From: Macrostomum lignano
Taxonomy: Eukaryota
Direction: 5' to 3'
Length of the DNA: 64,000 nucleotides
Assembly: GCA_002269645.1 (NCBI GenBank)
Contig: NIVC01000392.1
Coordinates: 372,001 to 436,000 of the forward strand
The translations under genes and the position numbers were made by a program. Shown here piece by piece: positions 17,188 through 50,615 of this stretch. Position 1 is the first letter of the stretch. Every line of letters begins with the position of its first letter. The notes beneath the pieces are model-generated. The model did not search any database, was not told the DNA's origin, and saw only the letters and a list, made by a program, of their open reading frames with translations.

Positions 17188-18378
17188 ATGACAGCTAAAA
17201 TGATGCTGGTATGTCGCGTCTTTCAAAGCATGGGCTTCTATAGCAAGCACGGTAAATTAACTCGACTGCTGTTCCGCTTCTCTCTGCTTCTGCTGATTTG
17301 CATAGTTGCTACCATGTGGCTGAGTAGCGGAAGAAAATCAGCTAGTTATATCGGACAGCATCTTTTCTGGACGAGGTCATCGAATAGTTCGAAACTCGAG
17401 CGAGTCCTGACAATGGTAAAGCTTCAACCAGACTACAAACCCGATGCTGCTAATCTGGCACTGCTGAGAAACGGAAGCGTGCGCTGTCGCGACGTCCAGT
17501 CTCTGTTCCCGAACAGGATACCGCCAGTCATCCACTGGACCAACGCCGATCAGAGAGTACTGAAGAAGCACCACAAAATGCTGCGTTCGTGGCGCAAAGT
17601 GCTAGGAGATTCCTTCGCCTACATGTACTGGGAGGACAAAGACATCAACAAGCTACTCGATATGCACTATCAGAGCCTCAGACCGTTTTACCAGAAACTA
17701 AAGGCCGGCATAATGAGGTCTGACATCGGCAGGTTGATCATCTTGCACCATGTCGGCGGCGTGTACTCCGACTTGGACGTCAATTTGCTAAGAAATATTA
17801 CCAGCTTTTTGCTACAATACTCGGCTGTGTGGTCGCAGGAGCCCATTGAGCACATTTACTACATGTACAAGCGGACTCAGCTACTGAGCAATGCGCTCTT
17901 CATGACGCAGGCCCGTCACAAGTTCTTGGAATACGTGCTCAACGCCTGGCCGCCCTGGTTCCAATCGCAATGGTCCAAGAAAACTGGGACCCTTGGTGAC
18001 CCAAACAAGGCAATTCACATAACTGGACCGCTAATGCTGAATTACTTCTTTGACAAATGTTCGAAGTCAAACTCTAGTCAAGCTGATTGCGGCGAATTGC
18101 ACCTGGCCGATCCTGACCAGTTTCAACCAATTTGGGATTCCGGGTATGCTCAAAACATCGCCAAAAATCAGTGCTCAAAGCATCGCAAGACCATGAAGCC
18201 GGTGCAAATTAAGCACTGCGATTTACTAGCGAGCAGGAAATTCGAGATGCGACCAATCAACCGGAATGTTACATACGGGGTGCACAGGTTTCTTCACACA
18301 AGCTATCGAGTGAAATACAGCTTCGACAAGTCTAAACTGGCTAAAGACATTTTGCCGCTCAGTCATTGCATTATTTAG
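17188..18378 (+). CDS. Glycosyltransferase family 32 (DXD-motif, Gly_transf_sug/OCH1-SUR1-like), type II membrane protein, single exon
   Basis: 396-aa ORF: N-terminal signal anchor, IPPVIHWT, RSDIGRLIILHHVGGVYSDLDV (GGxYxDxD signature), NALF and TGP motifs; AATAAA downstream near 18497. Confidence 0.9.
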   Translation: MTAKMMLVCRVFQSMGFYSKHGKLTRLLFRFSLLLLICIVATMWLSSGRKSASYIGQHLFWTRSSNSSKLERVLTMVKLQPDYKPDAANLALLRNGSVRCRDVQSLFPNRIPPVIHWTNADQRVLKKHHKMLRSWRKVLGDSFAYMYWEDKDINKLLDMHYQSLRPFYQKLKAGIMRSDIGRLIILHHVGGVYSDLDVNLLRNITSFLLQYSAVWSQEPIEHIYYMYKRTQLLSNALFMTQARHKFLEYVLNAWPPWFQSQWSKKTGTLGDPNKAIHITGPLMLNYFFDKCSKSNSSQADCGELHLADPDQFQPIWDSGYAQNIAKNQCSKHRKTMKPVQIKHCDLLASRKFEMRPINRNVTYGVHRFLHTSYRVKYSFDKSKLAKDILPLSHCII

Positions 18379-19020
18379 ACCCGATTGTGCCAGGTGCTGA
18401 GAAAAAATTTAACTATATAGTATCTCATAAACAGGTTGCTCATTGCTGGAAATGAACTAATTTTAGATAAAAGAGATGTAAACTTAAGCAGCGAAAAATA
18501 AAGCGTAAAAGTTCTGCTCTGGGCAAGACCGACTGCAATCGGTCGAGAATCCAGGTACGAGCGTAAGGGGACCTGGATTCTCGGGATGTCTTGGCCAACT
18601 GGCCTGACTAGTTACCGATCGCATTCGCTTTGGTCCGGAGCTCAGCTTCAGGCTTTATGTCAGTGCTTAAGTTCGCTTCTCCTTTGATGCAAATATCGGG
18701 TCATCTTTCAATCAGATCCAGTGGAATCATAGATTGTCAGTTTCCAGCAATGACTTCTTAATTAGCGTGAAATCTCTAGGTTTGATTAACCACCTTGGCA
18801 CTGCATACACAATTAACTGTATTTTACGATTATTTGATGAGCAAATTGCTTTTTTACTTTCGTGGATGCTTAAATAAAGTCTGTGACATACGGAGTGAAA
18901 GTCTGATGATGATGGGCAAACCTTCCTGCGTACGTCACAGTCTAATTTAAGCAATCCTTATTCCCTCCATTAACTATAATATGTCTGCTTTATTTTGTTT
19001 TCCTTTAGTATATATATATT

Positions 19021-19323: not shown

Positions 19324-20330
19324 ATTACATAAGTAAACATACATGTACACTTATGTAAGTGTACAGTGCCTTTGCAGTCAGTGTGATCTCAGAAGTTGAC
19401 TTAATCCAGGGTGGCAGAACGCTACACTCAAGACAACTGCTGCCTCTAGTCTAGTCTATGGTCGAAAGTTTTACTAAGACTTAATCTTTACAGCATTAAC
19501 TCAGCCCATTTTCCTCATTTTGGATCTCTCCTTTGAATCTGGTTAATCCAAAGTAAATTGTTTACATGGTTTACCATTGGGCCGATAAAGAAATTTTAGT
19601 TCTGACTTTTTTGCACATAGTTCTTTTGCGTGTAATTTTTTGCTTAAACCAAATGAACAGATGTAGAGATTTGATGAGTGTCTAAAAACTTTTTGACTTG
19701 CGCTAAAGTACGAATAGTAATGAGTAGGAAATTAAAATTTCTAAATTGTCTACTTTGTGCAAATTCATAATTTTTGTCAATCTAGAAATTGCGAAACAAA
19801 CACATGGACCCTCTGAGAACGTGATTTTAAAAAGTCTGTTGTCCTTCAGAATGACCTTCAAAAGCTTCGACAAAGCACATTTTTGGATAAATACTGATTT
19901 AACTTTATTCCGATATGATTATGTCTAAGCAATATTTAGTGTCTTTTACGAGTACGACAGGTACTTTTTACTGCATTATATGTTTACCCATGTTATAAAA
20001 AATAAACTAGACTTATCTCAATAATACGCGAAAAATACAAGCTACTTCAATTTTTGTTTTAAATACAACCTTAAAAGGGCTTGAACATTCTACAGTAGGA
20101 GCCAGTATACTTACTTACTGAAAAGCTAAATTCAAGACGGACTAAAGACAATCAAATAAAATAAATATTGAAGCCGAATCATAAAAGCTTTTGTTAGAGT
20201 ACAAATTCAAGCAGTTGCATCAATTGCATTTATTCATTAATATCCTGATATTTAAGCGTCTTAAAATACGCAATACGAAGTTTCATACTAAAAATGCCGA
20301 TAGTCCTAACAGTTATTGAAATGTCAAGCC

Positions 20331-22422
20331 TCAGACCACCAGCCTAACCAGACTGTTGTCACTCTCGTGCCCGGCGCCCGATGAATTCGCCGACTCAACT
20401 GACGAAGCATTGGAATCTAGTCGCTGACGTTCGCGACTTATTTGATTGCGCTTCCTCCGCTTCGAAGCGCGACTGTCTTCTTTGGCCAGTAGGCCAATTC
20501 TACTGGGCGTTTCAGCTTTGCGAGACTTTTTCTTGCGAGCTTGCCGGGGCGGCGGCATTACCCGGCCCTGCGGAACAAAAAAGTCAGCGTATACTTTAAA
20601 TTTTTGCATGACACAGTGCGTTTATTGTGTTAAATGCATCGTTGAATCTTCGAAGACACCCGAACTTGTACCATAGACTGAGCTAACTGCAAAGCTAGTG
20701 ACGTCAAAGGCGCAGTCATGTGTGCAATAATTTTAGATTGTGTCTATGGTTCTGGAGACAGACAATGGTAGATTGTGTCTGTGGTTCTGGAGACAGACAA
20801 TGGTATATTGTGTCTATGGTTCTGGAGACAGACAATGGTAGATTGTGTCTATGGTTCTGGAGACAGACAATGGTAGATTGTGTCTATGGTTCAGGAGACA
20901 GACAATGGTAGATTGTGTCTATGGTTCTGGAGACAGACAATGGTATATTGTGTCTATGGTTCTGGAGACAGACAATGGTAGATTGTGTCTATGGTTCTGG
21001 AGACAGACAATGGTAGATTGTGTCTATGGTTCAGGAGACAGACAATGGTAGATTGTGTCTATGGTTCTGGAGACAGAAAATGGTATATTGTGTTTATGGT
21101 TCTGGAGACAGACAATGTAGATTGCGTCTATGGTTCTGGAGACAGACAATGGTAGATTGTGTCTATGGTTCTGGAGACAGACAATGGTAGATTGTGTCTA
21201 TGGTTCTGGAGACAGACAATGATAGATTGTGTCTATGGTTCTGGAGACAGACAATGGTAGATTGTCTATGGTTCTGGAGACAGACAATGGTAGATTGTGT
21301 CTATGGTTCTGGAGACAGACAATGTTATTTTGTGTCCATGGTTCTGGAGACAAACAATGGTAGATTGTCTATGGTTTTGGAGGTAGACAATGGTACAAGT
21401 GGTTTTGTCACAGAAAATGATTAATTTGAGTGACTAGTGGCTCGCCACTCGTGAAAATTCAATCACTGTCCTAATTTATAATAATCTAAGGAGAGAATTT
21501 ATTAGAGATTTTAGAGATTATCTGAATAATTTAAAGAAATCATAGAAGAAATGTGCCGATTTCTTTTTGTGTGAGAACTTGTCAGAACATTCCGGACGAC
21601 GCACGTAGGTTGTTGTGCATCAAACACGTTGTGGCCATAGACAAAAAACCCGTTGTGGCCGATGTATTAAAAAGCGGCTTTACTTTTTGTCCTGATTGGC
21701 AGTCCATCCAAGGCGACCTCAATACTCTCTGAGACTAATATTCTGAAAAGATGTTTAGTAATCACCTGATCGTGCAGCGTCAAATGCAGCTTCAGTTTCT
21801 GCTGAGTGCACAGACTATAACTGCAGCCTGGCCTTGGACAAGGAAATCTGACTCCAAGATGACGCGATCGAATGTGCTGCTGCAAATTTCTAGCTAGAGT
21901 GTACGCTTTGCCGCAGCCAACGTAAGGACAAGAATGCCGAGGAGTTGACGGTCCAGCTTCAGTGGAACTATTAGAGCAATGCGCCGAGTTCAAGTGACCT
22001 TTTAGCAGGGCTTTGCAAGCCAGACGGACGCCGCACTGTGGACAGTCAATCTCTGCCGGATGCTCCAAAGCGCGATGCCGACGCAGAGCGCTGTAGCCGA
22101 CAAATTCAGCGTCGCAGTCGGGGCACCGACGAACGGCGTGCCGACGCTGATGCCGGGCCAGCTTCGACTGGCAGACGAACAGTCGATGACAGCCAGGATG
22201 AGGACACGGCAGGCACAGGCTTGACGCTTTGTGCACCACAGCTCGGTGAGCGGCCAGTTGCTTCTTCTGACGGAATCCGTTGTCGTAGGCGTTGCTGAAC
22301 GGTGGACAGTCCGGGCAGTGGTAGCGCTTGGGCGGGTGTTTTTCTTTACCAGCTCTCTTACTAGCGGTATGGCCTGCATCGAGGCTGTCACTGACTGACG
22401 ATTCGTCTGCAGATTCTGCCAT
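20331..22422 (-). CDS. GTF3A: TFIIIA (GTF3A)-like C2H2 zinc-finger protein with six fingers; exons 22422-21766 and 20567-20331, 297 aa
   Basis: Six C2H2 fingers whose sequences follow TFIIIA fingers 4-9 (FRQKKQLAAH; CPHPGC..F...SKLARH; EIDCPQC; GCGKAYT...NLQQHI..RH; last finger ending HD), then a basic tail. Phase-0 junction CAG|GTGATT ... TTTTTTGTTCCGCAG|GGC joins the exons in frame. Confidence 0.78.
20735..21395. repeat. 35-bp minisatellite in the GTF3A-like intron
   Basis: About 19 copies of AGATTGTGTCTATGGTTCTGGAGACAGACAATGGT. Confidence 0.95.
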
Positions 22423-23369
22423 AGTTTAGCCGGTCAATATGACTGAACAACTGTCTGTCTTTGATAACTCAACTCCATGCAGCAATGCTGTTGCGGTTCA
22501 TGCAATAAATGAAGTTAACTCTTCTTAATAAATTAGAGCGGCTAGGTTGTGGGACATCGGGGATAATCTGCTTAGATCGGGGCAGAGTAAAGCACTGAGA
22601 GTAGTGGGATGGGGGGTTTAGTCGCGTTGGGACAAGCCTATTTTAATTTTATATGAAATTTACAACAGGAGGCCATATTAAAGCAATAATAAAACAAAAT
22701 CGATTGATTTATTAAATGAAAAAGCGCACAGCAAATATTCGTATGTTACTACTTGTGCGTCGACAAATTTAAGTAGCATATTCGGTACATACAGGTTGGA
22801 CCAGCCGATCAATTGTAAAAAAGCAGACCTGCAATAAGTTTAGTCTTTTGCAATAAAATTATGTTGGAAATAGGGCTTTAAATGCTCTAAAAGACAAATA
22901 TTATTAAATATGTACTGTTGAATCACCCAGTGATGCAAATTTCATACATAGAGAAGCTACCTCAGACACATAAGTTTGTAATTGAAAAACATGTATTTGT
23001 AACCCGCTATGCACAGCAGCGTTTGGAATGCAATGTGTGAGATTTATTGTAATTATTTGTATTATTAATATTATAGAGTACTGCTGACGATACCTTATTA
23101 TAGTATACTACTTGTCCTTAGTAGGCTGGATACTTTCTATTCTAATGAATTACACACAAAAAGAAAATTCGCAAAAAAGCAAACAAGACAGTAGAAATAA
23201 TTGGCATTAAAAATAAGCAAAGAATGGAACGGAGGCTGTTGACATTAATGACAATAAAATTCCATTCATTATTTAATTAACTGTATTCTTTACAAACAAT
23301 TAAAACAATGAAAATGTCTACATTTAGTTAATATAGCTATTGAAATCCAATGAAGAGAACTCTATACTG

Positions 23370-23912
23370 CCATTCACTCTCCACTCAAAGCCATAGACAA
23401 TATTGCCATTCACTTTCCACTCAAAGCCATAGACAATATTGCCATTCACTCTCCACTCAAAGCCATAGACAATACTGCAATTCACTCTCCACTCAAAGCC
23501 ATAGACAATACTGCGATTCACTCTCCACTCAAAGCCATAGACAATATTGCCATTCACTCTTCACTCAAAGCCATATACAATATTGCCATTCACTTTCCAC
23601 TCAAAGCCATAGACAATATTGCCATTCACTTTCCACTCAAAGCCATAGACAATATTGCCATTCACTTTCCACTCAAAGCCATAGACAATATTGCCATTCA
23701 CTCTTCACTCAAAGCCATAGACAATATTGCCATTCACTCTTCACTCAAAGCCATAGACAATATTGCCATTCACTCTTCACTCAAGCCATAGACAATACTG
23801 CAATTCACTCTCCACTCAAAACCATAGACAATATTGCCACTCACTTTCCACTCAAAGCCATAGACAATATTGCCATTCACTTTCCACTCAAAGCCATAGA
23901 CAATATTGTCAT
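23370..23912. repeat. 36-bp minisatellite just 3' of the TBC1D31 stop codon
   Basis: About 15 copies of CCATTCACTTTCCACTCAAAGCCATAGACAATATTG. Confidence 0.95.
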
Positions 23913-23971
23913 CCATATTCGCACTTGAATATTTTTCCTACTTATTGGATCACCCCTCAAAGCTCAGCGCC

Positions 23972-26900
23972 TCAGTAGCTAGATTGACTGGTCGTGGTAG
24001 TCGCATCGTCATCGTCATGACCTTCAGCGTTAGCAGCGGCGGCCGCTACAGCGGCTTGCAGGGACGCGGCAGTGCCAGCATTAAGACCGGATTTTTGCTT
24101 CCTGACCGCGGCACTACCGCTGGTTTTCAGCCGGTCTCTAGCGGCCTGCAGCCGATCCAATAGGCGACCAACGTCGGCTTCTAGGCGACCATTGTCCTGG
24201 CAGACGCCTTCCAGCTCGGAGACCAAGCCGAAGCCGGCGCTGGCGCCGCCAGACTGCGGCATCAATCCCGGCGAGCCGTTGTCATCGTAGTCATCGTCAA
24301 GGCCGTCAGCTTCGTCGTCTATGATGTCATCTTCAAGATCAGCCGCGGTCGTCTGTCGCTGCCGACGGCCCAGCTGGTCGCCTAAGCGTTGAGCTTCAAC
24401 CTGACGATGCCGGGACTGCAGCGCTCGCAGTCGTTGTCGTTGAGCAGTGAGAGCGGCCAACTCGTCAACTCGGGCCCGACGCTGCTCTGCTGCCAGTTGG
24501 CGTCGCTGCTCGCGTAGAGTCGTCTCCTCCTGGGCGAGCATCGCTCGGCGACGCTCCTCGGCAGCCAGCAGGAGCTCCTGTTGGCGGCACCAGGCGGCCT
24601 CTTCAGCTCGTTGAGTCTCCGAACGACGCTGGGCTGTTTCCAGGGCCCTGCGCTCCTCCAGGTAGCGTCGCTCCTCTTCGCGGAGTCGGTCGCGTTCGCG
24701 CACCTGCATGAGTTCAGGGGTATTTTTTTAGGAACCAATCGGGGAATTCCTTACAAAGGCTGGAACTTTAGAAAGCTTTAATTTAAACTTTGACATATTT
24801 CTCATTTAGTTTAACTTTAAAGATGGTTTTTAATTTTGATTTCTAAAAAATTATTTAAGGTTTATTGTTAGGGGGAATTCCAGAAGGTTCACTGTTAGCA
24901 GAATTCCCCAACATTCATTTTTAGAGGAATTCCCAAGGTCCGCTGTTAATGGGAATTCTTAAAGGTTCATTGTTTAAGAGGAATTCACAAGGTTTATCGC
25001 TAAGGGGAATTCCTAAGGCTCGTATTTGCTAAGGGGAATTCCCAAGGTTTATTGCTAAGGGGAATTCCCAAGGTTTATTGCTAAGGGGAATTCTTAAGGT
25101 TTATTGCTAAGGGGAATTCCCAAGGTTTACTGCTAAGGGGAATTCCCAAGGTTTATTGCTAAGGGGAATTCTCAAGGTTTATTGCTAAGGGGAATTCTCA
25201 AGGTTTATTGCTAAGGGGAATTCTTAAGGTTTATTGCTAAGGGGAATTCTCAAGGTTTATTGCTAAGGGGAATTCCCAAGGTTTACTGCTAAGGGGAATT
25301 CTCAAGGTTTATTGCTAAGGGGAATTCCCAAGGTTTATTGCTAAGGGGAATTCCTAAGGTTTACTGCTAAGGGGAATTCCCAAGGTTTATTGCTAAGGGG
25401 AATTCTCAAGGTTTATTGCTAAGGGGAATTCCCAAGGTTTACTGCTAAGGGGAATTCCCAAGGTTTATTGCTAAGGGGAATTCTCAAGGTTTATTGCTAA
25501 GGGGAATTCCCAAGGTTTACTGCTAAGGGGAATTCCCAAGGTTTATTGCTAAGGGGAATTCTTAAGGTTTATTGCTAAGGGGAATTCTCAAGGTTTATTG
25601 CTAAGGGGAATTCTTAAGGTTTATTGCTAAGGGGAATTCTCAAGGTTTATTGCTAAGGGGAATTCTCAAGGTTTATTGCTAAGGGGAATTCCCAAGGTTT
25701 ATTGCTAAGTGGAATTCTCAAGGTTTATTGCTAAGGGGAATTCTCAAGGTTTATTGCTAAGGGGAATTCCCAAGGTTTATTGCTAAGGGGAATTCTTAAG
25801 GTTTATTGCTAAGGGGAATTCTCAAGGTTTATTGCTAAGGGGAATTCTTAAGGTTTATTGCTAAGGGGAATTCTTAAGGTTTATTGCTAAGGGGAATTCC
25901 CAAGGTTTATTGCTAAGGGGAATTCCCAAGGTTTATTGCTAAGTGGAATTCTCAAGGTTTATTGCTAAGAAGAATTCCCAAGGTTAATTGCTTTAATTTT
26001 TGTTTTAAGCCAAGATGGGAATTATATAAGTAGCACCACCAACCTGATAGTCCACAATGAACACCGGATAGCGATTGAACAGCGGGTACTGCGGCCCGCC
26101 CAGCGGTGCGAATGCGGGCAACAGACGACAGGGACAGATCTCGGCCGGAGTTCGAGTCCTGAGCTGGCGGGCCTGCTTCACCAGATCCCTGGCGCCTAGG
26201 CAACCGGGCTGGCGATAGTACAGCTCGAATTCGCGCACCTGTGCGCATTGATATCGATTTCTATTGATTAAATCCAAAAGGTACTCACTAATCTTGTACC
26301 TAAAACTTGTATCAGATAGCTAGCAAAGATTCTTTATTGCCAAATCCCGAATCAGATATTCTAAATCCTGGATCCCATATTGTAGATCCCGGATCCCGTA
26401 TTGCAGATCGCGAATCCCGAATTGCAGATCCCGAATCTCATATTGCAGATCCCGAATCTCATATTGCAGATCCCGAATCTCATATTGCAGATCCCGAATC
26501 TCATATTGTAGATCCCGAATCTCAAATTGCAGATCCCGAATCCCATATTGTAGATCCCGAATCTCAAATTGCAGATCCAGAATCTCATATTGTAGATCCC
26601 GAATCTCATATTGCAGATCCAGAATCTCATATTGCGGATCCTGAATCTCATATTGCGGATCCCGAATCTCATATTGCAGATCCAGAATCTCATTGCGGAT
26701 CCCGAATCTCATATTGCGGATCCCGAATCTCATATTGCAGATCCAGAATCTCATATTGCAGATCCCGAATCTCATATTGCAGATCCAGAATCTCATATTG
26801 CGGATCCCGAATCTCATATTGCGGATCCCGAATCTCATATTGCAGATCCAGAATCTCATATTGTAGATCCCGAATCTCATATTGCAGATCCAGAATCTCA

Positions 26901-29900
26901 TATTGCGGATCCCGAATCTCATATTGCAGATCCCGAATCTCATATTGCAGATCCAGAATCTCATATTGTAGATCCTGAATCTCATATTGCAGATCCAGAA
27001 TCTCATATTGCGGATCCCGAATCTCATATTGCAGATCCAGAATCCCATATTGCAGATGCAGAATCTCATATTGCAGATCTCGAATCTTATATTGCAGATC
27101 CCGAATCCCATTTTGGAGATCCTGAATGCCTTATTTTAGATCTCGAATCCCATATTGCAGATCCCCAATCCTTTATTTTAGATCCCGAATCTCATATTGC
27201 AGATCCCGAATCTCATATTGCAGATCCCGAATCTCATATTGCAGATCCCGAATCCCATATTGCAGATCCCGAATGCCTTATTTTAGATCTCGAATCCCAT
27301 ATTGTAGATCCCAAATCCAATTATTGCAAATGCTGAATCTCATATTGCAAATCCCGAATCCCATATTGCAGATCCCGAATCAAATTATTGCAGATCCCGA
27401 ATCCCATATTGCAGATTTCGATTCCCATATTGCAGATCCGGAATCCCATATTGCAGATCCCGAATTTACATAATTTGTATCCAAAATCCCACAGTTAAAA
27501 CAGAAATCTCTGAACAAGCATTAAGAAAACGGTTCAAACTCAAGCACACAATAGATACTACTTATTAACAAACCTCAGTAGCGCGCAGCAGCGGCCCCCT
27601 ACTCAGCAGAGTAAACCCGGCCACAAAGTACAGCAGATAGCCTGGCGGATGGCACAGCAGGCAGTCCCACACGGAAAGCCATTCTTCTCTAGTCAGTACT
27701 TCCGTAAGCAGAGTCTGCAACAGCGGCCAAGCCAGAATCTCCGAGGTGACACCCCTGGCGCACAGGTGAGCATAGAGCTCCTTATCGTGATAGGCAATTA
27801 GATTCTCAATGATTGCCAGAATATTCAATGGCGGATTGGGAAAATATTCGAACCAATGACCGCACCAGTTAGTGAGCACAGTCATGAGCACTTCCATAGA
27901 GTGCAGTTGACTATTTTGAAACAGTTTAACGAACGGAAACGCTAGCAAAGGCAGATAGTCGGCCTCGCCAAACAGAGGACTCCAGAAAGCTACGCAGCTC
28001 AGAGACCGTTGCAACACCCTGCCCAGCTTGTTGCTACGCAGAGGGAATCGGTCTTGCAGAGTGAGAAACGCGGGATGGATGCCTTTGTTATAGAGCGCAT
28101 TAAAAGCGGCGGTGTTCTCTGGCAGTTGAAGCAGAGTCTTCCAAATTAATAGGCGGTATTTTCCAGGAAACTGTCCGAATTCCTGCAGTATGGCTCGCAG
28201 CCTCTTGCGATTTAGCGGCTGGGGCTGCGGCAACTGCTGCTGCTGTTGCTGCTGCGATTGCTGCTTTGAAGACTTTGTTGGAGACACTGAAATGAAGTAA
28301 ATGCATATGTATCAGTTTGCCTACTCATGGGGGAATTGCTGAGATGCCGAAGATCATGGGGGGGAGGGGAATTGCTGAGATGTCAAGGCTCATGGGGGAA
28401 TTGCTGAGATGCCAAGGCTCATGGGGGAATTGCTGAGATGTCGAAGATCATGGGGGAATTGCTGAGATGTCAAGGATCATGGGGGAATTGCTGAGATGTC
28501 AAGGATCTTGGGGGAATTGCTGAGATGCCAAGGCTCATGGGGGAATTGCTGAGATGCCAAGGCTCATGGGGGAATTGCTGAGATGTCAAGGATCTTGGGG
28601 GAATTGCTGAGATGCCAAGGCTCATGGGGGAATTGCTGAGATGCCAAGGCTCATGGGGGGAATTGCTGAGATGCCAAGGCTCATGGGAGAATTGCTGAGA
28701 TGTCAAGGCTCATGGGGGAATTGCTGAGATGTCAAGGCTCATGGGGGAATTGCTGAGATGCCAAGGCTCATGGGGGAATTGCTGAGATGCCAAGGCTCAT
28801 GGGGGAATTGCTGAGATGCCAAGGCTCATGGGGGGAATTGCTGAGATGCCAAGGATCATGGGGGGAATTGCTGAGATGCCAAGGCTCATGGGGGAATTGC
28901 TGAGATGCCAAGGCTCATGGGGGGAATTGCTGAGATGCCAAGGCTCATGGGGGAATTGCTGAGATGTCAAGGCTCATGGGGGAATTGCTGAGATGCCAAG
29001 GCTCATGGGGGGAATTGCTGAGATGCCAAGGATCATGGGGGGAATTGCTGAGATGCCAAGGCTCATGGGGGGAATTGCTGAGATGCCAAGGCTCATGGGG
29101 GGAATTGCTGAGATGCCAAGGCTCATGGGGGGAATTGCTGAGATGTCAAGGCTAATCTCGGCTCAACTCGCACCTGAATAATGAAATTTCAGGTCACTAG
29201 CTTGCCTAGGGTAACTTATTAACTTATAACTCACAAGCTTAAAACTTGAGAAGTTTGACAATGTGAAGACACGTTCTTACCCCGCCCCCAGCAGCAGCAG
29301 CCTTGCCAGACACAATCGTATAGGTCCTGCCAGTGTCTCCGCCGGAGTCAGTAGCTGTCGCAGCAGTCCGGTCTGTCCGATCCGTCACGGGCTCAGTCGC
29401 CGGCCAGGCTGCGGCATCAGCGGCCGCCGCGGCAGCAGCTGCGGCATTGGCGGCCGCCCTGTCACTCATGGCCGCCCTGGCAGATTCGGGTCTCAGCGCG
29501 GTAGTCAGACAGTGGATCAACAGCTGCCCAGAGTTTACCAATGCTAGGCGATCTTTTGTCACGGCCAGTCTGGTCACGTGACTATCGGCCGATTGCAGCC
29601 GATTGGTCAGGGTTGCACCGGATGACCTGCCGCCGCCGGCGCCCAGGCTGACGCAGACAACGCCGCCCGAATGCGCCACGGCTAGTAGAGCAAGTGACCG
29701 CCGCTGATGCTGGGCCGAAGATGAAGAATTCAATCCAGCATCAGCTTCAGTTTCAGGCAAATTCACGGATCTGACAGCGTCAGGCGAGCTGGCAAAGGCC
29801 ACCTGACAGGTGTGGAGAAGTCAAAGTAAATTCATGTTTCACATGGAGTCTGCAAACCTAAACCTACAAAATCTGAAACCAAATCACCTGAACCTACAAA

Positions 29901-32900
29901 ATCTGAAACCAAATCACCTGAACCTACAAAATCTGAAACCAAATCACCTGAAACTACAAAATCTGAAACCAAATCACCTGAAACTACAAAATCTGAAACC
30001 AAATCACCTGAACCTACAAAATCTGAAACCAAATCACACCTGAACCTACAAAATCTGAAACCAAATCACCTGAACCTACAAAACCTGAAACCAAATCACC
30101 TGAACCTACAAAATCTGAAACCAAATCACCTGAACCTACAAAATCTGAAACCAAATCACCTGAACCTACAAAATCTGAAACCAAATCACCTGAACCTACA
30201 AAATCTGAAACCAAATCACCTGAACCTACAAAATCTGAAACCAAATCACCTGAACCTACAAAACCTGAAACCAAATCACCTGAACCTACAAAATCTGAAA
30301 CCAAATCACCTGAACCTACAAAATCTGAAACCAAATCACCAGAACCTACAAAATCTGAAACCAAATCACCTGAACCTACAAAACCTGAAACCAAATCACC
30401 TGAACCTACAAAATCTGAAACCAAATCACCTGAACCTACAAAATCTGAAACCAAATCACCTGAACCTACAAAATCTGAAACCAAATCACCTGAACCTACA
30501 AAATCTGAAACCAAATCACCTGAACCTACAAAATCTGAAACCAAATCACCTGAACCTACAAAATCTGAAACCAAATCACCTGAAACTACAAAATCTGAAA
30601 CCAAATCACCTGAAACTACAAAATCTGAAACCAAATCAACTGAACCTACAAAATCTGAAACCAAATCACCTGAACCTACAAAATCTGAAACCAAATCACC
30701 TGAACCTACAAAATCTGAAACCAAATCACCTGAACCTAAAAAATCTGATAAATGAATCCAGCTGCACTCCCTCATCACCTGTCTCAGCGGGCAGAGTTGC
30801 ATTCCCACACTAGCTGGCAGCTCCAGAACCCTGGCCATCTGCAGGCTATCCAGATCCCACACGTGCACCTGTCGAGTTTGACCGCAGGCTACTAGCTGGC
30901 GACCGTCGGGTGTGAAGTCCAGGCTGCGATAGCGAGGGCCCAGCTCGGCTGTGGATATTTTGCCAGAGGGAATGACTGGTTAGCGAGTAGCGAGTCAAAA
31001 TTGAGTGAAAATCTAAGAGAAAGCATATTGAATACATAAATGAGTGATAGGTTAAACAAAGACTGACGGATCGATTATTGCCACGTTTAAAGGAGTGACA
31101 CATAAAGGAGTACCACAACAAAGAGTTGGAATATTAGGTACCAGACCAGAGTCGGAAAAACACCAGAACAAAGAGTCGGAAAAACACCAGAACAAAGAGT
31201 CGGAAAAACACCAGAACAAAGAGTCGGAAAAACACCAGAACAAAGAGTCGGAAAAACAACAGAACAAATAGTCGGAAAAACACCAGAACAAAGAGTCGGA
31301 ATAATATCAGAACAAAGAGACGGAACAATAGGTACCAGAACAAAGAGCCTGAATAAAACAGGAACAAAGAGTCAGAATAATACCAGAACAAAGAGTTGGA
31401 ACAATAGGTATTAGAACAAAGAGCCTGAATAATACCAGAACAAAGAGTCGGACTAAGTTGGAAAAACATCAGAATAAAGAGTTGGAATAACACCAGAACA
31501 AAGAGCCTGAACAATAGGAGAACAATGGGCTGGAACATACATGCGCAACGTCCAAAATTCGGTCGGCCGTGCGACTTAGTTTTAACAAAAATGCGACGTA
31601 GTTTTTGGCCAAAAATGCGACTTACATGTAAAAAACCCTAAAGCAAAATTAACGCAACTTTGGGTAAACGGCGGGAGTAACTATAACTGTCTTATCAGGC
31701 AAAAATGCCTCGTCAGCTACTTAGTACTACTGCGTGGGTATTTTTGGGTGGGCATTTTTGCGACTTCCTTGGTTGGCTGCCAAATCAGTCGGCCGGATCG
31801 GCCGACTCGGCCGACTGTTGCGCATGTATGGGCTGGAAAATATCAAAACAAAGTCTTAGGCCTGAAATAAGAGGAAAACAATCATCAGAAAAGAACAAAG
31901 AGTCACAGGATTAAAAAAGCAAGAGCCGCACCAGAGATAATCCCGTCTGACATATTGGCATCCGGCCACTTACCCTCAGCGCCAGTGGACAATCCGGACA
32001 GCTGCAGAGGCGGCGGCGGAGTGGGCAGCTGACCCCTGCACTGCAGCGTCTCCGAGTCCCACAGAAACAGGCTGTCGTCGCGAAAGGCGGTCAAGATCAA
32101 ATTCCTAGTTGGCACAAAGCTGGCTAGCAATAACTGCACATCTTCGCGTACGCTCAAACGACGCAGTCTAGACCGAGCGTCGACATCCCACAGCAGGGTG
32201 ACGTCGGGATCTGTGGTGAGCACGTAGCGACCGCCAGAATGAGGGCTGATGCCAGTAACTGCGGCAGAGTGCCCGCTGAGAGTTGCCAGCTCGCTGGCGG
32301 GCCCCGAGCCGCTCTGCCCGATTGCCAGCAGGCGGACATCGCCGTCGGCTAAGGCGGCGAGAAATTGGCGACGATCTCGGAGGCCGAAGGAGAGCGCAGT
32401 GCACGGGTGACGGGTGTGCAGGACGTGCTCGAATCTGGGGACAGATGATATAATTATATAATAATTGATTACACCTGCCCTAATAGGCAGATGTGCAACC
32501 GACAGCTCAGCCGCAGCTATTCCAAGGACTGGGGGTCGCCACACACCCTCAATTACCCCAGCTAATGCTGGCACCCATTTTACAGCTGGGTGAACTGAAG
32601 GAATGCAGAGTTAAGTGTTCCGAGTGGGATCGGGAATCGAACCCACGGCTACAGTACAGTCCCTACAACCCCTCTCGTGGGGAGAGAGTAGAGCGCACAC
32701 ATTAACAACGGCCCTGACACAGAAGCTCCAAACTAATGTTGCTGAGCAGGGCTGTCGTGGTGCGAGCTGCTGGGGAGAGCTCACTGACCCATTAGATGAA
32801 AGAGACTAGCGAATTGTATCTGAGACTTCCAAGCAAGCATACTTTAAAAAAGTTTACACAAACCTGCCGCGTCCAAAGTCGAACAGATAAAAGTGGCCGA

Positions 32901-43900: not shown

Positions 43901-46900
43901 CAGGAGACTCTGTTCAAGGTTACTAATCCTACGGTGAGAGGGGCCTTTCTCGTGTTTGTTTATCATCGAGTTCTTTAGGAATGGCTCATAGTGCTTATTT
44001 GTAGGGTATCCTCAAGTTGCTGGGCCAGCCTCCCAGATCCTCAGTTGCTGGGCCAGCCTCCCAGATCCTCAGTTGCTGGGCCAGCCCATCAGATTTTCAG
44101 TTGCTGGGCTACCAGCCTCCCAGCTTCTCAGTTGCTGGGCCAGCCTGCCAGATCCTCAGTTGCTGGGCCAGCCTGCCAGATCCTCAGTTGCTGGGCCAGC
44201 CTTCCAGCTTCTCAGTTGCTGGGCCAGCCTCCCAGATCCTCAGTTGCTGGGCCAGCCTCCCAGATCCTCAGTTGCTGGACCAGCCTCCCAGATTCTCAGT
44301 TGCTGGGCCAGCCTCCCAGATTCTCAGTTGCTGGGCCAGCCTCTTAGATTCTCAGTTGCTGGACCAGCCTCCCAGAGTGTCAGTTGCTGGGCCAGCCTCT
44401 CAGATTCTCAGTTGCTGGGCCAGCCTCCCAACTTCTCAGTTGCTGGGCCAGCCTGCCAGATTCTCAGTTGCTGGACCAGCCTCCCAGATCCTCAGTTGCT
44501 GGCTAGCCTCCCAGATCCCCAGTTGCTGGGCCAGCCTCCCAGATCCTCAGTTGCTGGACCAGCCTCCCAGATTCTCAGTTGCTGGGCCAGCCTCCCAGAT
44601 TCTCAGTTGCTGGGCCAGCCTCTCAGATTCTCAGTTGCTGGGCCAGCCTCCCAGATCCTCAAGTTGCTGGGCCAGCCTCCCAGATCCTCAGTTGCTGGGC
44701 CAGCCTCCCAGATCCCCAGTTGCTAGGCCAGCCTCCCAAATCCTCAGTGGCTGGGCCAGCCTCCCAGATCCTCAGTTGCTGGGCCAGCCTCCCAGATCCC
44801 CAGTTGCTGGGCCAGCCTCCCAAATCCTCAGTGGCTGGGCCAGGCCTTCCAGAGTGTCGGTTGCTGGGCCAGCCTCCCAGATCATCAGTTGCTGGCCAGC
44901 CCACATCCTCCTAGAGTGTCAGTTGCTGAGCCAGCCTCCTATATCCTATTATAAGTAGTTGAGCAGTAGTTTGCTCAAACAATACCTTACTCAACTACTA
45001 TCGGTAGCACCCTACCCAACCACACGCCTGCCGCAGGACCCGTGGGCGGACCTGCCACCCTGGTCGGGCGATCCCAAGCGCCGAGTTCGCTGCTACCCGG
45101 TGCAGATCTGCTCGCCGGCACCGAGGCCGGCAGCTCAGCAGCAGCTGGTTGAAACCGGCTGCACTGACCGGATGCAGTTCGTCCGCTACGGTCGGGATAA
45201 TTCTAGCCAGCAGGGCATCTGCCGGTCGGTCTTTGCCAAGCTGCAGCAGCTGTACACTCTGCACTGCACTGAGGAGGATCCATCAATGGAGAAATTCTTC
45301 CCAAGGCTCTGGTGCATGCTGACTAGGTGAGGGTTGGTGGATTTGTTGTTGAATAAGTCGACAAAATAATCTACTTAGACGTCTACTCGTTATCCATAAT
45401 CCTAATTCATCCAAATCCCAATCCTAATCGCAATCCTGATCATAATCCATCCCTACCCCAATAATTCAAATCCTGATCCTAATCCGTCCTAATCCCAACC
45501 TAAATCCTAATCCATCCTAATCTCAATCCTGATCCTAATCCATGCTAATCCCAATCCTAATTCATCCTAATCCTAATCTCAATCCTGATCCTAATCCATG
45601 CTAATCCCAATCCTAATTCATCCTAACCCTAATCTCAATCCTGATCCTAATCCATGCTAATCCCAATCCTAATTCATCCTAATCCTAATCTCAATCCTGA
45701 TTCTAATTCATCCTAATCCCAATCCTAATTCATCCTAATCCTAATCTCAATCCTGATCCTAATTCATCCCAATCCTAATCTCGATCCTGATCCTAATCCA
45801 TCCTAATCCCAATCCTAATTCATCCTAATCCTAATCTCAATCCTGATCCTAATCCATCTTCATCCCAATCCTAATCCCAATCCTTATCATAATCCATCCC
45901 TACCCCAATAGTTCTAATCTTGATCCTAATCCATCCTAATCCCAATCCTAATCCAGTTTATAAAGGACCCAGATCCCTTGGGTAGAAATCCCATTGGAGT
46001 TTCTGGAAACTGATCCCCTGCTAAAAAACCCAATACCATAGTTAGCAACTCTGATCATTGGATTAAGACTGAAACCACCTGGCCATTTCCAACAGGTACC
46101 AAGCATTTCTAGGCCAGCAGTCGCAGAACACCCAGGCTGCCCTGCCTATACCCGTATTCGAAGCCATCTCTCGACTATTCGGCGTCACATTTGAACTGTT
46201 TGCTTCGCCATTGAACTGCTACTTTAAGCAGTATTGCTCGGCCTTTCCCGACACCGACTGCTACTTCGGCAGTCGTGGTCCCGTGCTGGACTTTTATCCG
46301 TTGGAGGGCTCGTTTGAAGCTAATCCGCCATTCTCCGAGGAGCTCATGGTTGCTATGGTCAACCACATGGAGGTGAGCTTGCTGTATCATCGTACGTTGT
46401 CAGATTTTACTGGAGAAAAGATTTGCATACAACAAACATTCTTGCTAATTATCAAGGCAAATAATTTTGCAACTTGTCGTCTGCGTGAGCCCGGTAAGAA
46501 GTCCTGAAAACGGCCCTTTTAGGGCACATCAACAAAACGGCCCTTTTAGGGCACATTAACAAAACGGCCCTTTTAGGTCTTTTTTTATCCTAAAAAGATC
46601 TTTTTCCGTTAGAAATTAATGTTTATGTATCAGCGTTTGCAGTGAATACATACATTTGTAATGCTTAAATCGCGCAGAATCTGCTGAAAGAGGCAACCGG
46701 CCCTCTGTCATTCATGGTGTTCCTGCCTGATTGGCGCGATCCGCCAACCGAAGCGCTGGTTCGACTGGAGGCTTCGCCGTACAATCGGCGACAGACTTGC
46801 GTGTTGCCATTTGAGCATAGCTACCGAAATGGCATGCAGCACTGCTTGGAGAGGTGGGCGACTATTTGCTATTCTGATGGTGGGTGGGAAGACAAAGGGA

Positions 46901-49429: not shown

Positions 49430-49491
49430 CCCATGACACTTTAGCCAGTGCCTCTGACACTTTAGTCAGTGCCTCTGACACTTTAGTCAGT
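49430..49491. repeat. Three copies of a 21-bp unit of the 51640-52340 family
   Basis: GACACTTTAG(C/T)CAGTGCCTCT versus AGTCAGTGCCCCAGACACTTT. Confidence 0.85.
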
Positions 49492-50615
49492 GTGATTAGA
49501 CTGGTGACCTCACAATCTCATTGTGATTAGACTGGTGACCTCACAATCTCATTGAGATTAGACTGGTGACCTCACAATCTCATTGTGATTAGACTGGTGA
49601 CCTCGCAATCTCATTGTGATTAGACTGGTGACCTCAATCTCATTGTGATTAGACTGGTGACCTCAATCTCATTGTGATTAGACTGGTGACCTCAATCTCA
49701 TTGTGATTAGACTGGTGACCTCAATCTCATTGTGATTAGACTGGTGACCTCAATCTCATTGTGATTAGACTGGTGACCTCAATCTCATTGTGATTAGACT
49801 GGTGACCTCAATCTCATTGTGATTAGACTGGTGACCTCAATCTCATTGTGATTAGACTGGTGACCTCAATCTCATTGTGATTAGACTGGTGACCTCAATC
49901 TCATTGTGATTAGACTGGTGACCTCAATCTCATTGTGATTAGACTGGTGACCTCAATCTCATTGTGATTAGACTGGTGACCTCAATCTCATTGTGATTAG
50001 ACTGGTGACCTCAATCTCATTGTGATTAGACTGGTGACCTCAATCTCATTGTGATTAGACTGGTGACCTCACAATCTCATTGTGATTAGACTGGTGACCT
50101 CACAATCTCATTGTGATTAGACTGGTGACCTCACAATCTCATTGTGATTAGACTGGTGACCTCACAATCTCATTGTGATTAGACTGGTGACCTCACAATC
50201 TCATTGTGGTTAGACTGGTGACCTCACAATCTCATTGAGATCAGACTGGTGACCTCACAATCTCATTGAGATTAGACTGGTGACCTCACAATCTCATTGT
50301 GGTCAGACTGGTGACCTCACAATCTCATTGTGATTAGATTGGTGACCTCACAATCTCATTGGTATTAGACTGCTGACCTCACAATCTCATTGAGATTAGA
50401 CTGATGACCTCACAATCTCATTGAGATTAGACTGGTGACCTCACAATCTCATTGAGATCAGACTGGTGACCTCACAATCTCATTGAGATTAGACTGGTGA
50501 CCTCACAATCTCATTGAGATCAGACTGGTGACCTCACAATCTCATTGAGATTAGACTGGTGACCTCACAATCTCATTGAGATTAGACTGATGACCTCACA
50601 ATCTCATTGTGATGT
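49492..50615. repeat. 31/29-bp minisatellite
   Basis: TG(T/A)GATTAGACTGGTGACCTC(AC)AATCTCAT, about 37 units; central block lacks the AC. Confidence 0.96.

What the first reader, a model, noticed from the sequence alone, without database searches (positions are those of the whole stretch)
20331..22422. TFIIIA-like gene lacking the DNA-binding fingers 1-3
Seen: six C2H2 fingers and a basic tail; an in-frame TAA lies two codons before the ATG; the ~1.5 kb up to the TBC1D31 stop (AT-rich DNA plus a minisatellite) shows no finger-coding sequence. Known: canonical TFIIIA has nine fingers; fingers 1-3 bind box C of the 5S gene and fingers 4-7 bind 5S RNA. By my recollection of the vertebrate sequences, these six match fingers 4-9 in order. 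Inference: an RNA-binding-only TFIIIA (5S storage/transport or dominant-negative regulator), or a lineage that transcribes 5S genes differently.
Basis: partly seen in the sequence, partly recalled or inferred. Interest (0 to 1): 0.8.

Follow-up and report, generated by a model that had tools for sequence, protein, structure and literature searches.

The report
Six-finger TFIIIA homologue in a flatworm
The flatworm Macrostomum lignano carries a real two-exon gene for a shortened relative of the 5S-rRNA factor TFIIIA that keeps fingers 4-9 but lacks the three N-terminal fingers that normally grip the 5S gene promoter; this would matter only if the genome has no full-length copy, which I could not check.

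Summary
On the minus strand, 22422..20331 is a two-exon gene: exon 1 22422-21766, a 1198-bp intron holding a minisatellite, and exon 2 20567-20331. It encodes 297 aa, identical to GenBank PAA83993.1, a 'hypothetical protein' of Macrostomum lignano.

The protein has five canonical C2H2 fingers, one aberrant first finger and a basic tail. An in-frame TAA sits at codon -2. The 1.55 kb up to the TBC1D31-like stop is AT-rich with a 36-bp minisatellite. No other finger-coding sequence exists anywhere in the 64 kb.

An exhaustive HMMER search, ranked by best colinear match, is led by nine-finger proteins. Most of those that carry a source name are called TFIIIA or GTF3A (molluscs, nemertean, brachiopod, crinoid, amphioxus, mosquitoes). 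Alignment places the six fingers on F4-F9. F6-F9 are clear, F5 rests on position only, and F4 keeps its helix motif but has lost the canonical Cys knuckle.

Three near-identical syntenic copies in the assembly share this architecture.

Not settled:
- whether a full-length TFIIIA exists elsewhere in the genome;
- what the protein does.

The 'RNA-binding-only' reading is plausible but untested. The odd F4, the missing Pfam F6 signature and a degenerate C-terminal motif all weaken it.

Verdict: a new variant of a known kind, of moderate interest.

The parts
21766..22422 (-). Coding exon 1 (residues 1-219): 35-aa non-finger leader plus all six zinc fingers
   Evidence: ORF and splice donor CAG|GTGATT. 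56.5% GC against 36-40% in the flanks. It is the only finger-coding segment in the window.
22426..22428 (-). In-frame TAA stop at codon -2, upstream of the ATG (22422-22420)
   Evidence: Read directly. Identical in the three paralogous loci.
22231..22317 (-). Finger f1 (residues 36-64), the F4 equivalent and aberrant: CPDC-x19-HRAVVH
   Evidence: Aligns to F4 and keeps the helix motif F[KR]xxxQLxxH. The canonical second Cys is replaced. The per-finger HMM is weak, at 6.7 bits to F4. The AF2 model folds it as a finger-like unit with an extra short helix, pLDDT 77-90.
22138..22206 (-). Finger f2 (residues 73-95), F5 by position: C-x4-C-x12-H-x3-H
   Evidence: Colinear alignment and spacing signature. 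The per-finger HMM is ambiguous: F9 40, F3 34, F5 31 bits.
22060..22125 (-). Finger f3 (residues 100-121), the F6 equivalent: C-x2-C-x12-H-x4-H, GYSALRRHRALEH
   Evidence: Best per-finger HMM is F6 at 34 bits. It aligns to the F6 motif KWSxLRKHxAxxH with W replaced by Y. It does not reach Pfam PF22110.
21979..22044 (-). Finger f4 (residues 127-148), the F7 equivalent: C-x2-C-x12-H-x4-H
   Evidence: Best per-finger HMM is F7 at 18.6 bits. Alignment.
21859..21930 (-). Finger f5 (residues 165-188), the F8 equivalent: C-x4-C-x12-H-x4-H, YTLARNLQQHIRSRH
   Evidence: Best per-finger HMM is F8 at 48.9 bits. The invariant Y174, N179 and L180 are shared with TFIIIA-like proteins.
21772..21840 (-). Finger f6 (residues 195-217), the F9 equivalent: C-x4-C-x12-H-x3-H
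   Evidence: Best per-finger HMM is F9 at 42.6 bits. Alignment.
20568..21765 (-). Single intron (GT..AG), 40% GC, holding a 35-bp x 19 minisatellite at 20734-21395
   Evidence: Intron length is 1198, 1185 and 662 bp in the three copies because of repeat copy number.
20331..20567 (-). Coding exon 2 (residues 220-297 plus TGA): basic, Ser-rich tail
   Evidence: The frame is continuous across the splice. The post-F9 'HDxxRxxP' is conserved. Resemblance to the TFIIIA tail motif K[KR]SxAxxLSG is only marginal: 40 of 1000 shuffles score as well.
20229..20234 (-). Candidate AATAAA poly(A) signal, 97 nt after the stop codon
   Evidence: Pattern match only; not verified with reads.
22443..22450 (-). 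Candidate 3' splice or trans-splice acceptor TTGTTCAG, 20 nt upstream of the ATG
   Evidence: Sequence inspection only. The in-frame TAA lies downstream of it, so an exon joined here could not extend the ORF.
22423..23971 (-). Intergenic spacer up to the stop of the TBC1D31-like gene: AT-rich, with a 36-bp x 15 minisatellite at 23364-23912
   Evidence: No finger-coding potential.

Best explanation
This is a genuine gene of the flatworm Macrostomum lignano, annotated from transcripts. It encodes an N-terminally shortened member of the TFIIIA (GTF3A) lineage. A 35-residue leader replaces fingers 1-3. Then come the equivalents of fingers 4-9, with F4 structurally aberrant, followed by a basic tail.

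Shown:
- the gene structure;
- the absence of any further finger-coding DNA within 41 kb upstream or 20 kb downstream;
- colinearity with F4-F9 of TFIIIA-like proteins;
- the same architecture in three near-identical syntenic copies.

Inferred:
- The protein lacks the F1-F3 module, which in Xenopus is necessary and sufficient for binding the 5S gene. So it cannot recognise box C the way canonical TFIIIA does.
- It keeps the central fingers that form the 5S-rRNA-binding module, so it most likely still binds 5S rRNA as a 7S-RNP-like chaperone or storage factor. I put this at about 0.55.
- Whether it is the animal's only TFIIIA, which would imply altered 5S promoter recognition through F4-F9 plus TFIIIC, or a specialised paralogue beside a full-length gene, is roughly even odds on present evidence.
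For: Gene model:
- The spliced CDS is identical to PAA83993.1.
- The Mlig_3_7 annotation is derived from RNA-seq and transcripts, with gene boundaries set from trans-splice and poly(A) signals where such evidence was available (PMC5730564).

Family:
- The exhaustive HMMER search of 1.84 billion representatives, ranked by best single colinear domain, puts nine-finger proteins of 350-600 aa on top.
- About 40 top hits were looked up, and about 26 carry a source name. Most of the named ones are 'transcription factor IIIA(-like)' or 'GTF3A' (Ylistrum, Tubulanus, Lingula, Haliotis, Gigantopelta, Littorina, Mactra, Anneissia, Branchiostoma, Aedes, Anopheles).
- Xenopus TFIIIA structures align query residues 48-111 to residues 114-176, which is F4-F6.

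Finger map:
- MAFFT colinearity with F4-F9, with all Zn ligands of f2-f6 in invariant columns.
- Spacing signatures.
- Per-finger HMM diagonal for F6-F9.

Truncation is real:
- In-frame TAA at codon -2.
- AT-rich upstream spacer with no GC island.
- No finger HMM hit elsewhere in the 64 kb.
- Three loci have the same 297-aa ORF, ATG context and synteny.

Constraint:
- Among the copies there are 4 synonymous and 0 nonsynonymous changes in residues 31-297. All 3 nonsynonymous changes fall in the N-terminal leader.

Finger roles (F1-3 for DNA, F4-6 as the minimal RNA domain) are as summarised in PMC2566860.
Against: - Defining TFIIIA features are missing or weak. There are six fingers rather than nine. 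Pfam's TFIIIA finger-6 model PF22110 does not hit even at E<=10, although it hits three reference TFIIIAs. The conserved C-terminal K[KR]SxAxxLSG motif is at best degenerate (2.9 bits; 40 of 1000 composition-matched shuffles do as well).
- f2 scores higher against F9 and F3 than against F5.
- The reference fingers were taken from hits to this very query, which biases the matrix towards colinearity.
- f1 (F4) has lost the canonical Cys knuckle, so its zinc binding and RNA contacts are uncertain.
- PDB sequence and fold searches are not family-specific: YY1, CTCF and ZNF410 score as well as TFIIIA.
- No flatworm orthologue could be retrieved for comparison.
- No binding or expression data were available.
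- The three copies are 97-100% identical, so they are not independent evolutionary evidence.
Confidence: 0.65

Rival explanations
1. Specialised paralogue. M. lignano also has a canonical nine-finger TFIIIA elsewhere that transcribes 5S genes. This six-finger gene would then be a duplicate that shed F1-F3. It would act only on RNA, for 5S rRNA storage or transport as with vertebrate 42Sp43, or as a competitor for 5S RNA or TFIIIC.
For: TFIIIA is essential for 5S transcription where tested, and F1-3 carry the DNA binding (PMC2566860), so losing them from the only copy looks costly. The degenerate C-terminal motif and the aberrant F4 fit relaxed or changed constraint. About 24 TFIIIA-like hits in the top 150 remain unidentified, and all hits below rank 150 were never seen. 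A second gene is therefore not excluded.
Against: None of the roughly 26 named hits among the 40 looked up is from M. lignano or any flatworm. The only M. lignano relatives found are the two 297-aa near-identical copies. F8, F9 and the tail are not needed for RNA binding in Xenopus (established knowledge), yet they are retained without amino-acid change among the copies.
Confidence: 0.45
2. Sole TFIIIA with a rewired promoter. This six-finger protein is the only TFIIIA of M. lignano and still nucleates Pol III complexes on 5S genes. It would use F4-F9 contacts (intermediate element and box A) and TFIIIC, or a different promoter arrangement, without box-C recognition by F1-F3.
For: It is the only TFIIIA-like protein of this species that I could retrieve. 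F7-F9 and the post-F9 HDxxRxxP segment are retained. All three copies share the architecture, so the truncation predates their duplication. Other lineages do express 5S genes by non-canonical routes, such as the Yarrowia tRNA-5S dicistrons (PMC2566860).
Against: Documented natural variation in TFIIIA finger number affects the C-terminal fingers (8, 9, 10), not F1-F3. The searches here could not cover the M. lignano proteome. No 5S gene is present in the window to inspect.
Confidence: 0.3
3. Not a TFIIIA relative. It would be a generic or lineage-specific C2H2 transcription factor whose similarity to F4-F9 reflects the shared zinc-finger scaffold.
For: Pfam reports only generic zf-C2H2 families. 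The best PDB sequence hit is YY1. Foldseek is led by CTCF and designed fingers. By summed score the top HMMER hits are long poly-ZF proteins. Identity to TFIIIA-like proteins is only 25-39%.
Against: The poly-ZF hits owe their scores to many separate stretches. By single colinear domain they fall below about 50 TFIIIA-like proteins, and one of them (P0007) is a fusion model containing amphioxus GTF3A. The order-specific pattern of C-x2/4-C and H-x3/4-H spacings, the F6 'aromatic-S-x-L-R-[KR]-H' motif, the F8 'Y..xRNLxxHIRSxH' motif and the post-F9 'HDxxRxxP' all match TFIIIA positions.
Confidence: 0.1
4. Annotation or assembly artefact. The true gene would have nine fingers, with the 5' exons missing from the assembly or lying far upstream.
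For: M. lignano's genome is repeat-rich and polyploid, and the window is full of minisatellites. Several TFIIIA-like database entries with 5-7 fingers are obvious N-terminal truncations that start in the middle of a finger.
Against: Unlike those fragments, this ORF starts with a non-finger leader preceded by an in-frame stop. Three separately assembled contigs agree base for base around the start. There are no gaps or finger-coding segments in the 41 kb upstream, which is occupied by the TBC1D31-like gene on the same strand. The annotation is transcript-based.
Confidence: 0.05

Closest known systems
Metazoan TFIIIA / GTF3A, the nine-finger 5S gene-specific Pol III factor and 5S rRNA chaperone (closest: lophotrochozoan 'TFIIIA-like' proteins such as XP_060073338.1 of Ylistrum balloti and XP_074650698.1 of Tubulanus polymorphus)
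   Same: Alignment is colinear over F4-F9, at 25-39% identity. The order of finger spacing types is the same. F6, F8 and F9 signature residues and the post-F9 HDxxRxxP are shared, followed by a basic tail.
   Different: It lacks F1-F3, about 100 residues. The F4 Cys knuckle is non-canonical. F6 is C-x2-C with Tyr in place of the conserved Trp, and falls below Pfam PF22110. The C-terminal K[KR]SxAxxLSG motif is degenerate.
Engineered Xenopus TFIIIA fragments zf4-7 and zf4-6 (PDB 1UN6, 2HGH)
   Same: The natural protein starts at about the point where these RNA-binding fragments start. phmmer aligns query residues 48-111 to residues 11-73 of 1UN6.
   Different: Those are laboratory truncations of a nine-finger protein. 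This is a genomic gene that also keeps F8, F9 and a tail. Its RNA binding is untested.
Vertebrate 42Sp43 (p43), an oocyte 5S-rRNA storage paralogue of TFIIIA (from established knowledge; not tested here)
   Same: It would be a functional analogue if the flatworm protein binds 5S rRNA but not the 5S gene.
   Different: p43 keeps nine fingers and is a vertebrate duplication. No orthology is implied and no comparison was run.
Fungal TFIIIA variants (S. cerevisiae, S. pombe, Yarrowia; PMC2566860)
   Same: They show that finger number and integrity in TFIIIA can change in evolution, and that 5S expression can become partly TFIIIA-independent.
   Different: The changes described there affect C-terminal fingers (a lost finger 8, an extra finger 10) and extensions. 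None removes F1-F3.

Membership tests
TFIIIA (GTF3A) | Nine tandem C2H2 fingers (ten in some fungi) | tested here: not met
   There are six: five canonical plus one aberrant. No further fingers occur in the 64 kb.
TFIIIA (GTF3A) | Best database relatives are TFIIIA orthologues, with a colinear multi-finger alignment | tested here: met
   (ranking by best single domain). (names). (alignment to F4-F9).
TFIIIA (GTF3A) | Position-specific finger identities (each finger most similar to its positional counterpart) | tested here: inconclusive
   Clear for F6, F7, F8 and F9. f2 is ambiguous and f1 is weak. The reference set was drawn from hits to the query, which adds circularity.
TFIIIA (GTF3A) | Finger-6 signature (Pfam PF22110, TFIIIA_zf-C2H2) | tested here: not met
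   PF22110 hits P0009, P0019 and Pongo TFIIIA at finger 6 (E 5e-9 to 3e-14). It gives no hit in the query at E<=10. Residual motif similarity is visible.
TFIIIA (GTF3A) | Conserved C-terminal motif K[KR]SxAxxLSG after finger 9 (a transcription-activating region in Xenopus, from established knowledge) | tested here: inconclusive
   The motif is evident in 20 or more reference tails. The query tail scores 2.9 bits against a shuffle mean of -2.1 +/- 2.4, and 40 of 1000 shuffles score as high.
TFIIIA (GTF3A) | F1-F3 module that binds box C of the 5S gene | tested here: not met
   Absent from the ORF, from the upstream spacer and from the rest of the window.
TFIIIA (GTF3A) | Specific binding to 5S rRNA and to the 5S gene internal control region; requirement for 5S transcription | not testable with these tools
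   Needs EMSA, ChIP or RNAi. No 5S gene is in the window.
TFIIIA (GTF3A) | Being the species' orthologue (reciprocal best hit within the M. lignano proteome; no other TFIIIA) | not testable with these tools
   No tool searches the M. lignano genome or proteome as such. Only the two near-identical 297-aa proteins were recovered, and the lists were capped at 120-150 rows.
42Sp43-type 5S RNA storage proteins | Nine-finger TFIIIA paralogue that binds 5S rRNA but not 5S DNA; oocyte-specific expression | not tested
   Considered only as a functional analogy. No sequence comparison or expression data were obtained.

The most novel reading that the evidence does not exclude
Macrostomum lignano, and perhaps macrostomid flatworms more widely, has no nine-finger TFIIIA at all. 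Its only TFIIIA is this six-finger protein without the box-C-binding module. 5S rRNA genes in this lineage would then be recognised by a different mode: F4-F9 plus TFIIIC, a changed internal control region, or an external or linked promoter.
Probability: 0.25. Interest if true: 0.75.

Novelty: new variant of a known kind. Interest (0 to 1): 0.55.

Why it matters
TFIIIA is the founding zinc-finger protein and the textbook case of one protein reading both a gene and its RNA product. F1-F3 do the DNA work and the central fingers do the RNA work.

A natural animal gene that keeps only the F4-F9 half would be an evolutionary 'domain-dissection' experiment. There are two outcomes:
- If it is the sole copy, 5S gene recognition in this flatworm must work differently from every characterised system.
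- If it is a paralogue, it is an independent invention of a 5S-RNA-only factor, analogous to vertebrate p43.

M. lignano is transgenic- and RNAi-tractable, so both outcomes can be tested directly.

In practice, three GenBank 'hypothetical proteins' (PAA83993.1, PAA48105.1, PAA53476.1) can be annotated as TFIIIA-like, N-terminally truncated.

Tried and rejected
1. The word-indexed homologue search with the protein found only itself, so it was too insensitive. The exhaustive HMMER search replaced it.
2. The profile search with 43 TFIIIA-like sequences listed only the best 120 of 1190 hits. These were TFIIIAs and poly-ZF proteins, with no flatworm entry, so the paralogue question stayed open.
3. 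I spent the last protein search on P0073, a GC-rich nine-finger hit with many C-x2-C fingers, hoping it was from M. lignano. It is an unnamed Logan contig.
4. The PDB sequence search and the Foldseek search of the AF2 model are not specific among poly-ZF proteins. I rejected them as a family test.
5. Comparing the three paralogous loci to find conserved hidden exons failed. They are 97-100% identical throughout, so there is no power.
6. The C-terminal activation-motif argument looked good by eye but was only marginal against shuffles. I downgraded it.
7. An Rfam scan for a 5S or SL RNA gene in the window gave 0 hits.
8. Searches of the literature and supplementary tables for GTF3A/TFIIIA in Macrostomum or flatworms, and for the gene IDs Mlig018582/Mlig017365, found nothing.
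9. I considered reading '.g2' in the locus tag as 'second gene of an operon with TBC1D31'. The methods text says only that the name prefix reflects 95% sequence clusters and does not explain the '.gN' suffix, so I did not use that reading.
Full report
**What is there**

The finding lies on the minus strand. Reading 22422 down to 20331 gives an ATG at 22422-22420 and a 657-nt first exon ending at 21766, with donor CAG|GTGATT. A 1198-bp intron follows, with acceptor ttttttgttccgcag|GGC. The 237-nt second exon ends in TGA at 20333-20331.

The spliced CDS is 894 nt and encodes 297 aa. It is 100% identical to GenBank PAA83993.1, 'hypothetical protein BOX15_Mlig018582g2' of the free-living flatworm Macrostomum lignano.

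That annotation was built from RNA-seq and a de novo transcriptome. Gene boundaries were set from trans-splice and poly(A) signals where such evidence was available (PMC5730564). The exons are 56.5% GC, the intron is 40% and the flanks are 36-38%. An AATAAA lies 97 nt after the stop.

**Checking the observation**

Exon 1 encodes five canonical fingers:
- f2, residues 73-95, C-x4-C/H-x3-H;
- f3, residues 100-121, C-x2-C/H-x4-H;
- f4, residues 127-148, C-x2-C/H-x4-H;
- f5, residues 165-188, C-x4-C/H-x4-H;
- f6, residues 195-217, C-x4-C/H-x3-H.

Ahead of them is a non-canonical unit f1, residues 36-64, CPDC-x19-HRAVVH. The tail encoded by exon 2 is strongly basic.

The in-frame TAA is at 22428-22426, one codon away from the ATG.

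The upstream same-strand gene ends at 23972. Its product carries WD40 and RabGAP-TBC domains, so it is TBC1D31-like. The 1549-bp spacer is 25-43% GC per 150 nt with no GC island. It contains a 36-bp x 15 minisatellite at 23364-23912.

A regex scan and nine position-specific finger HMMs, run on all six frames of the whole 64 kb, find finger-coding sequence only in exon 1. The next best segment scores 10.3 bits, E 0.07. The first 'finger' is aberrant. The interval also contains an intronic 35-bp x 19 minisatellite.

**Is it TFIIIA-like?**

Pfam sees only generic zf-C2H2 families. PDB sequence hits mix YY1, yeast and Xenopus TFIIIA, ZNF410 and others. Neither result is decisive.

An exhaustive HMMER search of 1.84 billion cluster representatives gave 4272 hits at E<=1e-3. 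By summed score the list is led by long poly-finger proteins. When re-ranked by the best single colinear domain, the top ~50 are proteins of 250-650 aa, most with eight or nine fingers at TFIIIA spacing. Query residue ~72 aligns to their residue ~140, which is F5.

I looked up sources for about 40 of these hits, and about 26 carry a name. Most of the named ones are called 'transcription factor IIIA(-like)' or 'GTF3A':
- scallop, abalone, Gigantopelta, Littorina and Mactra (molluscs);
- the nemertean Tubulanus;
- the brachiopod Lingula;
- the crinoid Anneissia;
- amphioxus;
- Aedes and Anopheles.

A few carry other automatic names ('topi-like', 'ZXDC-like', 'suppressor of hairy wing') but show the same nine-finger architecture. 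Two of these, P0022 and P0031, also show the tail motif. Xenopus TFIIIA structures align query residues 48-111 to residues 114-176, which is F4-F6.

**Finger-by-finger map**

MAFFT places f1-f6 column for column on F4-F9 of nine-finger TFIIIA-like proteins. All zinc ligands of f2-f6 fall in invariant or near-invariant columns.

The order of spacing types in f2-f6 is C4C-H3H, C2C-H4H, C2C-H4H, C4C-H4H, C4C-H3H. The consensus for F5-F9 in 30 reference proteins is C4C-H3H, C4C/C2C-H4H, C2C-H3H/H4H, C4C-H4H, C4C-H3H.

Position-specific HMMs give a clear diagonal for four fingers:
- f3 to F6, 34 bits;
- f4 to F7, 18.6 bits;
- f5 to F8, 48.9 bits;
- f6 to F9, 42.6 bits.

f2 is F5 by position only; it scores F9 40, F3 34 and F5 31 bits. 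f1 is weak by HMM, but its helix FRQKKQLAAH matches the F4 consensus FKKHxQLxxH. The canonical second Cys, four residues before the Phe, is replaced. A CPDC further upstream supplies the only Cys pair.

An AF2 model built on the 43-sequence alignment folds six beta-beta-alpha units. f1 has an extra short helix in the insertion, with pLDDT 77-90.

There is a caveat. The reference fingers came from hits to this query, so the matrix is somewhat biased towards colinearity.

**TFIIIA features that are not met**

- Pfam's TFIIIA-specific finger-6 model PF22110 hits three reference TFIIIAs at F6 but not this protein, even at E<=10. The F6 motif is recognisable by eye (GYSALRRHRALEH against KWSxLRKHxAxxH), but Trp is Tyr and the knuckle is C-x2-C.
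- The conserved tail motif K[KR]SxAxxLSG is obvious in most reference tails. It is at best degenerate here: 2.9 bits, and 40 of 1000 composition-matched shuffles score as high. Only the immediate post-F9 HDxxRxxP is clearly shared.
- Foldseek of the model against the PDB is led by CTCF and designed fingers, so it gives no family information.

**Is the truncation real?**

The M. lignano assembly holds three syntenic copies in the order TBC1D31-like, this gene, then a convergent Gly_transf_sug gene. They lie on contigs NIVC01000392.1, NIVC01004235.1 and NIVC01003082.1, and all encode 297 aa.

The copies are 97-100% identical at the DNA level. They differ mainly in minisatellite copy number, with introns of 1198, 1185 and 662 bp. 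They share the ATG context, the TAA at -2 and the splice sites.

They corroborate the assembly. They are too similar to reveal hidden conserved exons.

Codon differences among them are 4 synonymous and 0 nonsynonymous in residues 31-297. All 3 nonsynonymous changes fall in the N-terminal leader at residues 19, 29 and 30. This is weak but consistent evidence of constraint on the finger array.

Other database 'TFIIIA-like' entries with 5-7 fingers start in the middle of a finger and are plainly fragments. This ORF instead begins with a non-finger leader behind an in-frame stop. A TTGTTCAG acceptor-like site lies 20 nt upstream of the ATG, with the TAA downstream of it, so nothing spliced there could extend the frame.

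**What could not be settled**

No tool here searches the M. lignano genome or proteome directly. The capped lists (150 and 120 rows) contained no flatworm protein other than this cluster, and about 24 TFIIIA-like hits remain unnamed. I therefore cannot say whether a nine-finger TFIIIA exists elsewhere in this species, or what other flatworms have.

The window contains no 5S or SL RNA gene. Literature and supplementary-table searches found no mention of TFIIIA/GTF3A in Macrostomum or other flatworms.

**Mechanism**

Established knowledge, summarised in PMC2566860, holds for Xenopus TFIIIA. [quoted passage not shown] F4-6 are the minimal 5S-rRNA-binding domain. F1-3 and F7-9 contact the two outer promoter boxes (A and C).

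A protein consisting of F4-F9 therefore cannot dock on box C in the canonical way, but keeps the RNA-binding core. My best estimate is a truncated TFIIIA-lineage protein (about 0.85 for family affinity and about 0.9 for true absence of F1-3 from this gene) that still binds 5S rRNA (about 0.55).

It is roughly even whether it is a specialised paralogue beside a full-length TFIIIA, or the only TFIIIA working with a changed mode of 5S gene recognition. The aberrant F4, the Tyr-for-Trp F6 and the degenerate tail motif mean that neither the RNA-binding nor the transcription function can be assumed intact.

Known natural variation in TFIIIA affects the C-terminal fingers in fungi: a lost finger 8 and an extra finger 10. 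I found no described case that lacks F1-F3.

**Verdict**

The functional inference remains a hypothesis. This is a new variant of a known kind. It is currently a GenBank 'hypothetical protein'. Interest is moderate, and would rise to high if a genome-wide search shows no full-length TFIIIA.

Noticed in passing
window 1-64000 (e.g. 24926-25992, 26335-27465, 29856-30748, 44008-44901, 49487-50613): The window is crowded with minisatellites of 14-36-bp units. There are at least 25 arrays, several of them 0.8-1.1 kb long at 87-97% unit identity. The two near the zinc-finger gene vary in copy number between the three paralogous loci.
   Followed up: partly
window 17188-18378 (+): An intronless 396-aa ORF with a Pfam Gly_transf_sug (PF04488) glycosyltransferase domain lies convergent with the zinc-finger gene. 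The same neighbour is present in all three paralogous loci.
   Followed up: partly
window ~18540-18582 (+): A perfect 12-bp inverted repeat (GAGAATCCAGGT ... ACCTGGATTCTC) forms a strong hairpin about 160 nt after the glycosyltransferase stop. The RNA fold of 18505-18610 is -42.4 kcal/mol, z = -3.3 against shuffles. Its nature is unknown.
   Followed up: partly
L001, L002, L003 (NIVC01000392.1, NIVC01004235.1, NIVC01003082.1): The TBC1D31-like / TFIIIA-like / glycosyltransferase block is present three times in the assembly at 97-100% nucleotide identity. This fits the reported hidden polyploidy of M. lignano. Two copies encode identical proteins, and the third differs at three residues of the N-terminal leader.
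   Followed up: yes
P0007 (Branchiostoma lanceolatum XP_066287850.1, residues ~644-848): A 989-aa amphioxus 'zinc finger protein 420-like' model shares a 90% cluster with a 325-aa protein named GTF3A. The long model therefore looks like a fusion of a poly-ZF gene with the amphioxus TFIIIA gene.
   Followed up: no
P0137 (330 aa, source unknown): This is a TFIIIA-like protein that starts with Met and has seven fingers (F3-F9 equivalents). It could be another N-terminally shortened TFIIIA or a partial gene model.
   Followed up: no
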